Shown one piece after another: positions 8,205-43,005 of a DNA stretch of 64,000 nucleotides. This DNA comes from Gracilinanus agilis. Taxonomy: Eukaryota. The stretch spans positions 174,658,486 to 174,722,485 of the forward strand of contig NC_058135.1 of the NCBI RefSeq assembly GCF_016433145.1, in the 5' to 3' direction. The first letter of the stretch is position 1; the number at the start of each line of letters is the position of its first letter. The position numbers and the translations under genes are program-made. The notes beneath the pieces were generated by a model that was not told the origin of the DNA, searched no databases, and worked only from the letters and a program-made list of their open reading frames with translations.

Positions 8205-10090
8205 ATTGCCTACAACATACCAAACATGGTGCTAGACTACAAGGGTAAAGAATGAATACTCTCACGGAGCTTACTTACTAATGAAGGAGAAGTGTGTGTG
8301 CATGTATGTGATATCTGTTTATATGACATAAATACCTAGAGAATGGGTCTAAAATTAATCAGTACAGAATAGTTAAATGACAAGATACTTAGGATTAGCA
8401 CTAGAAGTGACCACCCTGAGGTCTACCTTTTGCTTTTTAAAAATTTTTTTAAGTTTATTTATTTAATAAATTAAATTAGAATATTTTCCCCATGCTTACA
8501 TGATTTTTTCTCTTTTTTTAAAGCTTATTTAATTAATTTATTAATTTTGAGTGCTGGAATATAGCCTTTCTCACCTCCACTTCATGGAGTCCCCCTCTTC
8601 CTTTAAACTCGGACGCTATCTTCTTTTGCAAAAAGCAAAAGGTAGCTTGATCACATGGGTCAATGGGGACATGATTGGGGATGTAGACTCTAATGGATCA
8701 CCCTAGTGAAAATATGAATAATACGGAACTGAATCTTGATCAGTGACACATATAAAACCCAGGAATTGCTCTTTGTTTATGGGAGAGAGTTGGGAGGAGG
8801 GGAGAGAAAGAACATGATTCATGGAACCATGGAAAAGCACCCCAAAATAAATAAATAAATAAGCTTTAAAAAAAGAGAAAAATGAAGTGGAGGCTAATAG
8901 AAGGACAGTGAGGTAGGAACTGGAGTGCCCTGAGAGCAATAAAGAAAAGTCCAGTTTGGTTAAATCCCAGAATGGAGCAGGAATGATAGGACAGTCATGG
9001 CCATTAAGGGGGAAGAGATAGACTATGCTACGGTCAGACAGGGCTTTTAAAAGCTAAACAGAGTTGCTTATATTGTATCCTGGATGTAACGGGGAGCCGA
9101 TGGAATTATTGAACAGGGGAGTCATGCGACCGGGTTAGCAATTGAGGGAAATTTCTTGGCACAGTGTGGGCAGTGATCTAGAGTGGTCAGAGGCTTGAGA
9201 AAGGAGACCAATGAGGAGCCGCTGGCTGTAATCTAGGGAGGAGGTGAGAGGGACTTCATCTGGGCGAGCTGAGAGATGGGGTCAGATGGGAGAGTTAGTG
9301 TTGGCTTTGGCATCTCCAGTGCTTGGCACAGTGCCTGCTATGTAGGTGCTTAAGGAATATTGATTGATTGATTGATTGATTGATTAAGTAGAATTGATAG
9401 AAATCTTTCAGCTCACTCGTTTTAAAGGCAAAGATTTCTCCCACTTCTACTGTAGGGATGGGATTTTTGGCTCTCTTTATTATTACACTACCCAATGGCT
9501 ATGTGGGGTAAAGGAGGATTGAGAGTCAAGAGTAATGCTGAGGTTATAATCCCAGGAGGCTGGAGGGAAGTGTGGTAGTGCCTTTGACAGAAATAGGGAA
9601 GCTTGAAGAAGAGGTTTTCTGGGAAAGATAATGAACTCAGCTTTGGACATGTTGACTTTGAATTTAAGGTGTCTTCAGGACATCTAGTTTAAAATGTCTA
9701 ATTGACGATGACTGATTCAGGACAAGACAGGCTTGATAAGGTTCCTGAGGGAGCAGCGTTGACAAAGAGAGGGGAGTAGAGATAGAGGTGGGAGTGGAGT
9801 TGGAGACTAAATGAGTCCAGTTGAACCCTTTGTGAAATGGCCATGCAGGCTAAGGAGTCACCCTTACAACCCTGGGGAGCTGGTTTCCCCAAAGGAAGGA
9901 CCAGAATGTTAAGGGGTCCAGCAGCTGTGTCATGAGGGATAATTGAGTAGCAAAACCTGGAGAACAATGTATAAGAACAGGAAGTATTATGGAATGATCA
10001 GCTGTTTCTCAGCAATATAGTGATTGAGGACAATTCTGAGGAATTTATGACAAAGAATGCTATCTCCACCAGAGAAAGATCTGTTGGAGT
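8205..10090 (-). mobile_element. L2 LINE fragment interrupted by L1 stubs and an L2/MIR tail with (TTGA)6 at 9360-9383
   Basis: Antisense L2 purine-rich motifs (ccagtttgg, ggagaccaatgaggag, gctttggacatgttgactttg). Confidence 0.7.
8645..8875 (+). mobile_element. L1 3' end with A-rich tail
   Basis: gattggggatgtagactcta...aagaacatgattcatg...aataaataaat; shares a 20-mer with the stub at 52107. Confidence 0.85.
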
Positions 10091-40204: not shown

Positions 40205-41403
40205 ACTAGGGACTTTGAGGCTTTTCTGAAGTTTATATAATTGGCTACATCACAAAATACATGTGCTGTGAAAAGTAGTTTTCTGGTACGAAATGGTACA
40301 TTTAGGATTGTAGGATTATAGATTGAGAGCTAGAGTCATCCGAAGGGGTCATCTTTACAAAGCCAGGACTTTCTTCCTCTATATTCTCAGTGCTTAGCAG
40401 AGTGCCCGACCCATAGTAGATGCTTAAACACTAGGTGACTAACCGATCTCTTTGGTGGTGATGGTGGTCGTTATTTTTCTGAGGAGGAAACAAGGTCACA
40501 AAAGTGGAATGTTATGCCTAAGGTAAGCCAGGTAGTGACGTGCAATGCTAGAATTCAAACCCAGCTCATCTGAATCCAAATCCAGCATCCTTTACCAAAA
40601 TGTAAGTGTTCCTCATTGTGGTCCTCTGCCTGTTTCTCCATAGGTGACTATGATTTGCCCCCATAAAGCCCTGGCTTTTAATCTGAACATTTGCAAACTA
40701 ATATATAGTAGAATGAAAAAAATGCATCACCAGCTGAATATCTTAGAATGGTTGTCAACACTCAAGAGATTTAATCAACCTAAAGGTTTAATGTGTTCAA
40801 TGTATCATTTGCATTGAAAATAAGTAAAGGCTTATAAATTGTTTACATTTCAACGGCTTCCCACAGAACTGTCATAGTTGTATTATAGCTTAATCACATC
40901 CAACAACAAGATTCTGATTTTAAACTCTAAATGATGAAAACCTCCCTTTTGGCTTTATGTCTTTATACTCAATGCCAAGTCGAAGTGAGTAAGTGAATGT
41001 GTGTTAAGACTTGTGCTTTGCAGTGTTCTTTAGTTAAAATTCTAACTAACGAGGTTCATATGGATTGATATGTTACCTGTACTTGGAAAACCTTGACTTT
41101 TTCATGGTTCCAATTGTATATAAAATGAAGAGGGCATAAGACAGATGTTTCTAGATCTTAAGTGTCATTTTATGGCTGTTCCCATCTTCTTTCTCCATGT
41201 TTGCCTTCTGTCTTCAGATATTTTCTCTGACTCAACTTATCTTCTGGGGATGACTTTTAAGTTCTTCCTGTTTGGGATATCTGGTCTATAGTTAACCAAA
41301 TGTACACCTGGTATATAGAATTATCACCGCCATTACTAAAACTAGAAGGACATAAAGTGTTTTTACTTTCTAATAAAACCTACTTTTTTCTTCTACTTCC
41401 TAG

Positions 41404-41612
41404 CAGACATATGGAGTGATCATTCATTTCAGACGGATCCAGATTTGCCACCTGGATGGAAAAAAATTTGTGACATTGCTGGGATCTATTACTGGCATAT
41501 ACCAACGGGAACCACCCAGTGGGAACGTCCTGTGTCCATCCCAGCAGATCTTCAGGGTTCTAGAAAAGGGTCCTTTAGTTCTGTAACTCCATCTCCCACC
41601 CCAGAGAATGAG
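41404..41612 (+). CDS. APBB2: APBB2 coding exon with the WW domain: (A)[69 protein letters not shown]
   Basis: Pyrimidine tract then TAG/CAG acceptor at 41401-41406; donor GAG|GTAAAT at 41613; 209 nt, phase 1 to phase 0; FE65-family WW signature LPPGW...[13 protein letters not shown]. Confidence 0.97.
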
Positions 41613-41822
41613 GTAAATTTTTTTAATAGTTTGTTTGGTTGACAATAACATGTCACACTTCTTTTAACCACTCACTCCTATTCAAACAGGTCAATGAGGT
41701 AAGCTTTAGTTACAGTATTTATTGGATTTAAAGTGTGAATAGTGTTTCATTTTGTGAGTAGAATTAATGTCCATTTCCCACAGTTTTTGTTCTTAATGAC
41801 TCTTAGTCTTTATGAACTAGGG

Positions 41823-41998
41823 CAGTGATGAGTAAACTATGCCCCCACCCAGGCCATAGTTTGTCCATCACTGCCTTAAGCAATTCCCTAATCACTGCGC
41901 TCCCACATCCAGATATAGTGATTAGGGAATTGCTTAAGGCAGTGATGGGCAAACTATGGCCTGGATCTGGCCCACAGGGAATAGTTTGCCCATCACTG
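41823..41998. mobile_element. Composite palindromic hAT MITE with four TIR copies
   Basis: Perfect 8-bp TSD AACTAGGG at 41815-41822 and 41999-42006; TIR CAGTGATGGGCAAACTAT at 41823 (+, 2 mismatches), 41856-41873 (-), 41940 (+), 41981-41998 (-). Confidence 0.9.
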
Positions 41999-42779
41999 AA
42001 CTAGGGTAATAGATACAATGAATAAAGTGAAGAATGTTATTCTATTCTGTAGATACAGGTTGTAGTCAGACTTTACATGCCAACTAAAGTTTCTTGGCTA
42101 GATATTTTATAAGTATTGTGACCCTTATTAACCTTTGGTTGCTAGAGGTAGTAGGTGGACTCAGTCAATGAGATAATACTTAAGATTCCTTAAGACCTAA
42201 TTTTTGACAAAATATTAAAAATCCTAAGGTTTTCAACATGATAGAAGTGAAAATATTTTGGCAGTTATGTTTAGTTACATAACCTTTTAGTGTTCAACTT
42301 CAGTTTGATCTTTAGTGAAATGGCGTGAAGAATTTTTTTTAAATTGAAGAATGATACATACATGAAAAATTACTGAAAAAAAAGCCCTGCTATGAGAGGC
42401 AGTACATGATAGTGAATAGAAAAATAGTTTTGGAATCAAGAAGACCTTGAGGGTAGGAATGTTTCATTCAAAAACATTCAAATGTTTCATGATTTCTCAG
42501 AACCTTGGACAGCACCTGGCACAGAGTAGGTATTTAGTAATTGTAATCACTACTACCACATTTTTTAGTTATTTGACTGACAGTCTTAAATCTTTTTTAC
42601 AACCATACAAGATTGCCATCCTTCAGAAGGTCTCCCAAAAAGGATATCTCCTGATTTTCCCTTGGCAACAAGGTTTATATTGTGATAACAATTGGATAGT
42701 GAACATTCTCTTTTTAATTTGTTTCATCTCTAAGTTGTATCATAGTATAGTTTGGAAATTCAATCTCTTGAGGGAAATA

Positions 42780-43005
42780 ATGATGGCGAGCATTTATATA
42801 GTACTTTAAGGTTCATAAAATGCTTTGAATATATTCTTATTTGATCCTCTTAACCTTGTGAACTAGACACTATTATTCTTGTTTTAAAGATGAGGAAACT
42901 CATGTGGTTGAGGTCTAGTGACTTGTTCAGAATCACAAAGCTGATAAATGTCTGAGGTTTGCTTTGAATTCATGTCTTCCTGACCCTATATCCAGCACAT
43001 AGCTA
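42780..43005 (-). mobile_element. MIR-family SINE
   Basis: gagcatttatatagtactttaaggtt...tatttgatcctc...agatgaggaaact...tttgaattcatgtcttcctgac. Confidence 0.75.

What the first reader, a model, noticed from the sequence alone, without database searches (positions are those of the whole stretch)
41849..41964. 48-bp near-perfect RNA hairpin about 240 nt downstream of the WW exon donor
Seen: 41849-41896 pairs with 41917-41964 at 47 of 48 positions, the exception being a U-G wobble (41864/41949), closing a 20-nt loop. A competing three-hairpin fold is possible through TIR1-TIR2 and TIR3-TIR4. Established: MITE hairpins are a known source of miRNAs and endo-siRNAs, long intronic duplexes are ADAR substrates, and such palindromes can extrude DNA cruciforms. 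Inference: a marsupial-specific intronic small-RNA or editing element co-transcribed with APBB2; if the family is multicopy, its small RNAs would have built-in targets.
Basis: partly seen in the sequence, partly recalled or inferred. Interest (0 to 1): 0.7.

Follow-up and report, generated by a model that had tools for sequence, protein, structure and literature searches.

The report
Hairpin from a fold-back hAT transposon
The near-perfect 48-bp hairpin is real, but it is the built-in palindrome of one young copy of a very abundant opossum "jumping gene" fragment (a four-ended hAT MITE) sitting in an APBB-family intron, and nothing yet shows that it makes small RNAs or is edited.

Summary
Observation confirmed. 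Arms 41849-41896 and 41917-41964 pair at 47 of 48 positions, with one G:U. The RNA fold of 41815-42006 is -129.4 kcal/mol, z = -15.5.

The hairpin is the core of a 176-bp hAT-type MITE at 41823-41998. The element has CAGTG...CACTG ends, four copies of a 22-nt terminal repeat and an 8-bp target-site duplication, AACTAGGG.

Read data show three things:
- The family is very abundant in the source organism: 4,529 contigs, roughly 10^3-10^4 copy equivalents.
- Paralogous copies share the same layout.
- Two related organisms, about 5.5% diverged, have a clean empty site with a single AACTAGGG. The insertion is therefore lineage-specific and came in as one unit.

One arm mismatch is what neutral decay of a young copy predicts, so selection need not be invoked.

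Small-RNA production and A-to-I editing could not be tested. No RNA run on record holds the stretch, and no raw reads were available. The geometry is wrong for a canonical pri-miRNA.

The scan had already noted this stretch (s1-196729) and the same family on other DNA (s1-153824, s1-173160).

Side lead: the family's terminal about 65 nt recur in hAT MITEs of a CpG-rich, non-vertebrate-type animal genome found in JGI gut metagenomes. This is a candidate cross-phylum transfer.

Verdict: an ordinary transposon copy, of low interest.

The parts
41406..41612 (+). 3' part of the upstream coding exon (WW domain); donor GT at 41613-41614
   Evidence: Frame translation; Pfam WW PF00397 E = 2.7e-9; best PDB matches are APBB1 and APBB3 WW domains
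41815..41822 (.). Left copy of the 8-bp target-site duplication AACTAGGG
   Evidence: Sequence; contigs of organisms B and C carry a single copy and no element (joint 41810->41997)
41823..41998 (.). 176-bp non-autonomous hAT-type element (four-ended fold-back MITE), ends CAGTG...CACTG
   Evidence: Right boundary is exactly 41998: loose ends of 371+ contigs behind it have no consensus. Empty orthologous site in X4 and X13
41823..41873 (.). Left mini-element (TIR1 41823-41844 +, TIR2 41852-41873 -), 51 bp, with an 8-nt deletion relative to the right one
   Evidence: Family contigs hardly lay on 41824-41846 (depth 210 against about 400,000 on the right)
41874..41896 (.). Inner palindrome, left arm (23 nt, 23/23 complementary to 41917-41939)
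41897..41916 (.). 20-nt non-palindromic centre, the hairpin loop. Differs from the family majority at 41897, 41901 and 41915
   Evidence: table 3
41917..41939 (.). Inner palindrome, right arm
41940..41998 (.). Right mini-element (TIR3 41940-41961 +, TIR4 41977-41998 -), 59 bp. Its reverse complement matches the 5' end of metagenome hAT MITEs at 34/41
41849..41964 (+). The reported hairpin: 48-nt arms 41849-41896 / 41917-41964 (TIR2 plus inner arm pairing with inner arm plus TIR3)
41999..42006 (.). Right copy of the target-site duplication AACTAGGG
   Evidence: an X1 contig covers 41975-42300 with 0 differences (record 8)

Best explanation
The hairpin is the structural by-product of a transposon, not a dedicated RNA element. 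A 176-bp non-autonomous hAT element of a 'four-ended fold-back' family is made of two inverted mini-elements of about 59 bp flanking a 66-bp palindromic centre. It was cut and pasted as one unit, through its outermost ends, into this intron by a transposase supplied in trans, duplicating the 8-bp target AACTAGGG. This happened after the lineage split from two related organisms that still have the empty site. Because the whole element is a near-palindrome, TIR2 plus the inner arm is the reverse complement of the inner arm plus TIR3, which gives the 48-bp duplex. The copy is young, so the arms have picked up only one substitution. In the pre-mRNA the element should fold into a long duplex: local hairpins first, then the thermodynamically favoured long hairpin. 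It most likely leaves with the intron. Some promiscuous ADAR editing or trace Dicer products are possible, but there is no sign that this matters to the gene. Shown: anatomy, target-site duplication, empty site, abundance, shared family layout, energetics. Inferred: trans-mobilisation, the fold-back origin of the family, and the fate of the RNA.
For: CAGTG...CACTG ends, four copies of a 22-nt TIR and an 8-bp direct repeat exactly at the boundaries. X4 (organism B) and X13 (organism C) each have a contig covering both flanks (27/454 and 16/298 differences) that skips 41811-41996 and keeps a single AACTAGGG. X1 has 4,529 contigs laid on the element. Summed word depth reaches 434,000 against 27.2 on the single-copy flank, and about 73,000 over the loop. 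Loose ends behind 41998 have no consensus (agreement 0.38-0.45). Contig records 1-7 align without gaps from 41849/41857 to 41969-41998 at about 85-90%, so paralogues share the TIR2-arm-loop-arm-TIR3-TIR4 layout. Both strands and DNA fold alike, as expected for a DNA palindrome. With at most about 2.75% lineage divergence, about 2.6 arm substitutions are expected in 96 nt, and 1 is seen. The TIR occurs nowhere else in the 64-kb window. Related hAT MITEs in metagenome contigs have the same 15-nt TIR and 8-bp duplications with a central TA, as here. Earlier scan notes describe 184- and 199-bp copies of the same four-ended family elsewhere in this genome.
Against: No autonomous partner or transposase was found, so hAT membership rests on termini and target-site duplication only. 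The family name in Repbase or Dfam could not be checked. X1 may be the sample the assembly came from, and its left junction is not covered (depth 0 at 41640-41800; the tool says such a hole proves nothing). The depth ratio is only a rough proxy for copy number. RNA-level neutrality is inferred, not measured: no RNA reads could be laid.
Confidence: 0.86

Rival explanations
1. The hairpin is a precursor of a miRNA or of endo-siRNAs. Drosha and/or Dicer cut the intronic duplex, and the small RNAs target the thousands of other family copies in transcripts.
For: The duplex is long and nearly perfect. The family is multicopy, so targets exist. There is precedent: MADE1 MITE hairpins gave the miR-548 family, and many plant miRNAs derive from MITEs (review PMC4091103). 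Half of the marsupial-specific miRNAs of Devor et al. 2009 overlap transposons, as summarised in the same review.
Against: No Rfam miRNA family reaches its gathering score: MIR9471 scores 54 against 150, and the others are at most 27.5 bits. These are generic hairpin matches. A 49-bp perfect stem continuing to about 85 bp has no single-stranded basal junction about 35 bp from the loop (established Microprocessor geometry; my inference). The TE-derived opossum miRNAs listed in that review came from L1/L2 and one Mariner, not from hAT. The copy is absent in two related organisms, so there is no conservation. Efficient long-hairpin dicing in mammals is known mainly from rodent oocytes (my own knowledge). 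No RNA run holds the stretch.
Confidence: 0.07
2. It is a functional ADAR target or RNA-structure element. Hyper-editing or the rigid duplex 236 nt after the donor would modulate splicing or retention of the WW exon's downstream intron.
For: Self-folding palindromic MITEs can be heavily edited. [quoted passage not shown] The predicted duplex exceeds the length ADARs need.
Against: In the same study opossum brain gave the weakest hyper-editing signal of the vertebrates tabulated: 613 reads and 2,168 sites, against 54,519 reads in frog. That argues against massive editing of an abundant hairpin family, though only 65% of reads mapped. There is no conservation of the insertion. There was no way to compare RNA and DNA here. 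Base-pairing-triggered 'SOS splicing' of DNA transposons acts on exonic and UTR copies but not on intronic ones (PMC12779559, Extended Data Fig. 2 legend).
Confidence: 0.05
3. It is an assembly artefact: a chimeric or fold-back read product rather than genomic sequence.
For: Palindromes can be created by library artefacts. The left junction is not covered by laid contigs in X1.
Against: An X1 contig runs from inside TIR4 through the duplication into 300 nt of unique flank without a difference (record 8). Thousands of independent contigs show the same layout. A perfect 8-bp target-site duplication and a matching empty site in two other organisms are not what an artefact produces.
Confidence: 0.01

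Closest known systems
[quoted passage not shown]
   Same: A short non-autonomous DNA transposon whose inverted repeats fold into a near-perfect hairpin when transcribed. It is multicopy, so any small RNA has built-in targets (PMC4091103).
   Different: A different superfamily (Tc1/mariner, TA duplication, against hAT with an 8-bp duplication). MADE1 is a simple two-ended 80-bp palindrome, whereas this element has four ends and an extra inner palindrome. miR-548 has small-RNA evidence; this element has none.
Palindromic ~200-bp Harbinger MITE of Xenopus tropicalis, the most hyper-edited repeat family in frog
   Same: A MITE that is itself a palindrome, forms a tight intramolecular dsRNA without a partner copy, and is of similar size (PMC5625713).
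   Different: PIF/Harbinger rather than hAT. Editing is shown there and untested here. Opossum shows very little hyper-editing overall in the same study.
Horizontally transferred hAT families of the opossum (SPIN, OposCharlie1, hAT1, ExtraTerrestrial; Gilbert et al. 2010 as cited in PMC11614815)
   Same: hAT elements and their MITEs, abundant in the opossum and shared at high identity with an insect. Here the family's terminal about 65 nt recur in a CpG-rich animal genome in gut metagenomes.
   Different: The other host here is unidentified and is not known to be Rhodnius.
Maize double-Ds (one Ds inserted in inverted orientation in another), the classic four-ended hAT composite (my own knowledge)
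   Same: A hAT-superfamily composite with four transposase-recognisable ends in inverted arrangement.
   Different: Double-Ds is a nested insertion of two 2-kb elements and causes chromosome breakage. Here two mini-elements of about 59 bp flank a palindromic spacer, and the whole behaves as an amplifying MITE family.

Membership tests
hAT-superfamily non-autonomous element (MITE) | 8-bp target-site duplication flanking the element | tested here: met
   AACTAGGG at 41815-41822 and 41999-42006; a single copy at the empty site in X4 and X13
hAT-superfamily non-autonomous element (MITE) | Short terminal inverted repeats starting CAG/TAG, with the outer ends complementary | tested here: met
   TIR1 41823-41844 and TIR4 41977-41998 both start with CAGTGATG and are complementary over 19 of 22 positions (each row compared directly); the 15-nt core equals the TIR of the metagenome hAT MITEs
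hAT-superfamily non-autonomous element (MITE) | Small, non-coding, many dispersed copies with unrelated flanks | tested here: met
   176 bp. 4,529 contigs in X1; loose ends beyond 41998 have no consensus
hAT-superfamily non-autonomous element (MITE) | Termini shared with an autonomous element that encodes a hAT transposase | not tested
   No transposase ORF in the window near the element or in the 120 metagenome loci.
Canonical pri-miRNA | Stem of about 35 bp between a single-stranded basal junction and an apical loop | tested here: not met
   49-bp perfect stem that continues through small bulges to about 85 bp
Canonical pri-miRNA | Match to a curated miRNA family | tested here: not met
   Best Rfam hit is 54.1 bits against a gathering score of 150; the others are at most 27.5 bits
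Canonical pri-miRNA | Mature 21-23-nt reads with Drosha/Dicer end signatures | not testable with these tools
   No RNA run on record holds the stretch and only contigs were served.
ADAR hyper-editing substrate | Long, nearly perfect intramolecular dsRNA in a transcribed region | tested here: met
   Predicted fold; intronic on the sense strand of a WW-domain gene. Transcription itself was not shown
ADAR hyper-editing substrate | Clustered A-to-G RNA-DNA differences | not testable with these tools
   No raw RNA reads. X4 and X13 lack the element
SOS-splicing substrate (AKAP17A/CAAP1/RTCB) | DNA transposon with pairing inverted repeats located in an exon or UTR | tested here: not met
   The element is intronic. 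[quoted passage not shown]

The most novel reading that the evidence does not exclude
The thousands of fold-back copies of this family, many presumably intronic, form a lineage-specific pool of near-perfect hairpin RNAs of at least 48 bp. These would be diced into small RNAs, or hyper-edited, and would act on the other copies embedded in opossum transcripts. The family would have arrived recently by horizontal transfer involving an insect-type host. This copy would then be one working unit of a marsupial endo-siRNA or editing network rather than inert DNA.
Probability: 0.08. Interest if true: 0.6.

Novelty: new member of a known kind. Interest (0 to 1): 0.22.

Why it matters
The main value is as a caution. 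In this genome, near-perfect long intronic hairpins are expected by the thousand, because an abundant hAT MITE family is itself a palindrome. Such hairpins should be checked against the repeat family before being put forward as miRNA, siRNA or ADAR elements.

Two family-level questions become testable:
- Does a mammal carrying 10^3-10^4 self-folding MITE hairpins process or edit them, given that opossum brain shows very little hyper-editing?
- Did this family enter the opossum lineage by horizontal transfer? Its termini recur in a non-vertebrate-type genome, and it seems to be missing from two related organisms.

For the host gene itself there is no sign of any consequence.

Tried and rejected
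- **Rfam, all families, E up to 1, on 41000-43000.** Only sub-threshold generic hairpin hits, rejected as family membership.
- **Other copies in the window.** None, so the family could not be studied from the window alone.
- **Literature.**
  - The TIR words occur in no held paper.
  - Gentles 2007 and Devor 2009 are not held.
  - No paper names this family.
  - The JGI contig ids occur in no paper.
- **Viral-contig scan for the TIR.** No hits.
- **Identifying the host of the metagenome contigs.**
  - Pfam on the ten longest ORFs found only decayed RT, APE and mariner fragments.
  - The protein atlas says only 'Eukaryota'.
  - The search for homologous proteins with an RT fragment returned 2,496 unnamed JGI and ENA proteins.
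  - My recollection that these JGI ids are higher-termite gut samples remains unverified.
- **SOS splicing as a mechanism.** Rejected because the element is intronic.
- **Three-hairpin fold as the dominant structure.** Rejected on energy: -99.4 against -129.4 kcal/mol. It may still be a co-transcriptional intermediate.
- **Selection on the stem, argued from 3-4 loop differences against 1 arm difference from the family majority.** Rejected for now. About 30 copy-equivalents share the loop letters, so these are probably markers of a minor subfamily.

Full report
**1.
- The repeat finder reports an inverted repeat with arms 41849-41896 and 41917-41964: 48 nt, 98% complementary, 20 nt apart.
- The single non-Watson-Crick position is T41864 opposite G41949.
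- RNAfold of 41815-42006 gives one long hairpin of -129.4 kcal/mol. Dinucleotide shuffles give -54.7 +/- 4.8 (z = -15.5; none of 200 as stable).
- The reverse strand as RNA (-124.5) and the + strand as DNA (-72.9) fold the same way. The symmetry therefore belongs to the DNA and not to one transcript.
- It is the longest close inverted repeat in the window.
- The hairpin begins 236 nt after the donor GT at 41613.
- The exon ending at 41612 encodes a WW domain (Pfam E = 2.7e-9). Its closest solved relatives are the APBB1 and APBB3 WW domains. The gene assignment to the APBB family is sound, but 'APBB2' was not checked further.

**2. Anatomy.**
- The hairpin is the inner part of a larger unit. 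An 8-bp direct repeat, AACTAGGG, lies at 41815-41822 and 41999-42006.
- This repeat brackets a 176-bp element (41823-41998) that starts with CAGTG and ends with CACTG.
- A 22-nt terminal repeat occurs four times: 41823-41844 (+), 41852-41873 (-), 41940-41961 (+) and 41977-41998 (-). It occurs nowhere else in the 64 kb.
- Between the second and third copy lies a 66-bp centre. It consists of two perfectly complementary 23-nt arms (41874-41896 and 41917-41939) around a 20-nt non-palindromic core.
- The element is therefore two inverted mini-elements flanking a palindromic spacer: left 51 bp, right 59 bp.
- The left mini-element carries an 8-nt deletion relative to the right one.
- The reported 48-bp duplex is simply TIR2 plus the inner arm pairing with the inner arm plus TIR3.

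**3. It is a transposon insertion, inserted as one unit, and it is young.**
- I laid Logan contigs of four runs on 41640-42300, intron only, with the exon left out by choice.
- Organisms B (run X4) and C (run X13) each have one contig that covers both flanks. Differences are 16/298 and 27/454, about 5.5%.
- Each contig jumps from 41810 to 41997 with one letter between. After allowing for a 1-nt difference in a T run, this is an empty site carrying a single AACTAGGG and no footprint.
- This confirms the 8-bp target-site duplication. It shows that all 176 bp arrived together, and it places the insertion after the split from B and C.
- With at most about 2.75% divergence on this lineage, about 2.6 substitutions are expected in the 96 arm nucleotides. 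One is seen. Near-perfect pairing therefore needs no selection.

**4. The family is very abundant and shares the layout.**
- Run X1 (organism A) holds 94% of the sampled words. Its single-copy flank depth is 27.2.
- In X1, 4,529 contigs lay on the element at 85% identity or more.
- Summed word depth reaches about 434,000 over 41962-41984 and about 73,000 over the loop. The tool warns that this is not a copy number. As an order of magnitude it means 10^3-10^4 copy equivalents.
- Loose ends behind 41998 have no consensus (agreement 0.38-0.45), which fixes the right boundary.
- Listed contig pieces (records 1-7) align without gaps from 41849/41857 to 41969-41998 at about 85-90%. Paralogues therefore have the same TIR2-arm-loop-arm-TIR3-spacer-TIR4 order and spacing.
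- This agrees with earlier notes of this scan on other DNA of the same genome (s1-153824, 184 bp; s1-173160, 199 bp) and with the sibling note on this stretch (s1-196729).
- A 59 + 66 + 59 = 184 bp consensus would make the present copy a 184-bp member with an 8-bp deletion.
- This copy differs from the family majority at 41897, 41901 and 41915, all in the loop. About 30 copy-equivalents share those letters, so they probably mark a minor subfamily rather than private change.

**5. Energetics and RNA fate.**
- The three local hairpins (TIR1:TIR2, inner arms, TIR3:TIR4) sum to -99.4 kcal/mol on the full sequence. The long hairpin is -129.4.
- Folding growing 5' prefixes shows that TIR1:TIR2 forms first and is displaced once TIR3 is available.
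- The stem is 49 bp perfect and continues through bulges to about 85 bp. It offers no single-stranded basal junction about 35 bp below the loop, so it is not a canonical Microprocessor substrate (inference from established pri-miRNA geometry).
- Rfam gives only sub-threshold generic hairpin matches.

**6. What could not be tested.**
- No listed holder is on record as RNA, all served runs are contigs, and the two read tools are capped at one call each. Small RNAs, editing and splicing effects therefore remain untested.
- The literature supplies both precedent and caution:
  - MITE hairpins gave rise to miR-548 (PMC4091103).
  - A palindromic Harbinger MITE is the most hyper-edited repeat in frog (PMC5625713).
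  - The same survey found the weakest vertebrate hyper-editing signal in opossum brain: 613 reads and 2,168 sites. That speaks weakly against heavy editing of an abundant hairpin family.
  - 'SOS splicing', which recognises paired transposon ends, removes exonic and 3'-UTR copies but not intronic ones (PMC12779559).

**7. Where the family comes from (side lead).**
- The exact 22-nt TIR pattern, with its CpG restored as Y/R, hits at least 120 JGI metagenome contigs from about a dozen samples. There were no hits in viral contigs.
- Those contigs carry textbook hAT MITEs of about 215, 305 and 420 bp, with a 15-nt TIR and 8-bp duplications that have a central TA. Examples are L086, L101, L104 and L098.
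- They sit in non-coding eukaryotic DNA with decayed non-LTR and mariner fragments.
- CpG observed/expected is 0.79 in those loci against 0.15 in the window. The host is therefore not a vertebrate-type genome.
- The reverse complement of 41958-41998 matches their 5' end at 34 of 41 positions. Three of the seven mismatches are of the CpG-to-TpG/CpA type, and three more lie together at TIR positions 18-20.
- The loose-end consensus of 162 X1 contigs at 41965, reverse-complemented, is identical over 26 nt to the next subterminal block of one metagenome subfamily (for example L004:6541-6658:+).
- Organism A therefore also holds longer relatives with the same first roughly 65 nt.
- This pattern suggests a hAT lineage shared across phyla. 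It resembles the SPIN, OC1, hAT1 and ET families shared by opossum and Rhodnius (Gilbert 2010, as cited in PMC11614815).
- I could not tell whether it is one of those four. I also could not identify the host. From memory only, these JGI ids are higher-termite gut metagenomes.
- Consistent with a recent arrival, no contig of X4 or X13 lies on the element, whereas the tiny run X2 of organism A yields 60. This is weak evidence.

**8. Verdict.**
- The feature is real. It is explained as an ordinary, young copy of an abundant palindromic hAT MITE.
- The small-RNA or editing reading is not excluded, but it has no support.
- Interest is low for this locus. The family-level questions (RNA fate of thousands of hairpins, possible horizontal origin) are the only parts worth following.

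Noticed in passing
L001-L120 (e.g. L004:6541-6658, L014:624-838, L086, L101, L104): The opossum family's 22-nt TIR and its first about 65 nt recur in hAT MITEs (about 215, 305 and 420 bp; 15-nt TIR; 8-bp duplications with central TA). These are abundant in a CpG-rich (o/e 0.79), non-vertebrate-type animal genome found in about a dozen JGI metagenome samples. This is a candidate cross-phylum horizontal transfer. The host is unidentified (termite-gut samples from memory only).
   Followed up: partly
window 41824-41984, runs X4 and X13 against X2: Runs of the two related organisms B and C show no contig on the element, although they cover the single-copy flanks. A tiny run of organism A shows 60 contigs. 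The family may be absent or rare in B and C, which would mean a recent burst or invasion. The evidence is weak (contigs only, run types unknown).
   Followed up: no
window 41681-41704: 77 nt into the intron, GTCAATGAG (41690-41698) is preceded by a pyrimidine-rich tract ending in CAG and followed by GTAAGC. It repeats the exon end AATGAG|GTAA (repeat finder D2 and D4). It could be a 9-nt in-frame micro-exon or a decoy donor. No RNA evidence was available.
   Followed up: no
window 41897, 41901, 41915: This copy differs from 94-97% of family depth at three loop positions, but its right arm does not differ from the family majority at any position. About 30 copy-equivalents share the loop letters, which suggests a minor subfamily rather than faster change in the loop.
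   Followed up: partly
window 8505-8882: A second inverted repeat: 34-nt A/T-rich arms, 94% complementary, 310 nt apart. It may be another non-autonomous DNA transposon.
   Followed up: no
window 41640-41800, run X1: X1 holds 94% of the sampled words, yet no X1 contig was laid on the left flank. The likely cause is the tool's filter against human-like records, since the contig probably runs into the conserved WW exon. The left junction therefore lacks independent read support.
   Followed up: no
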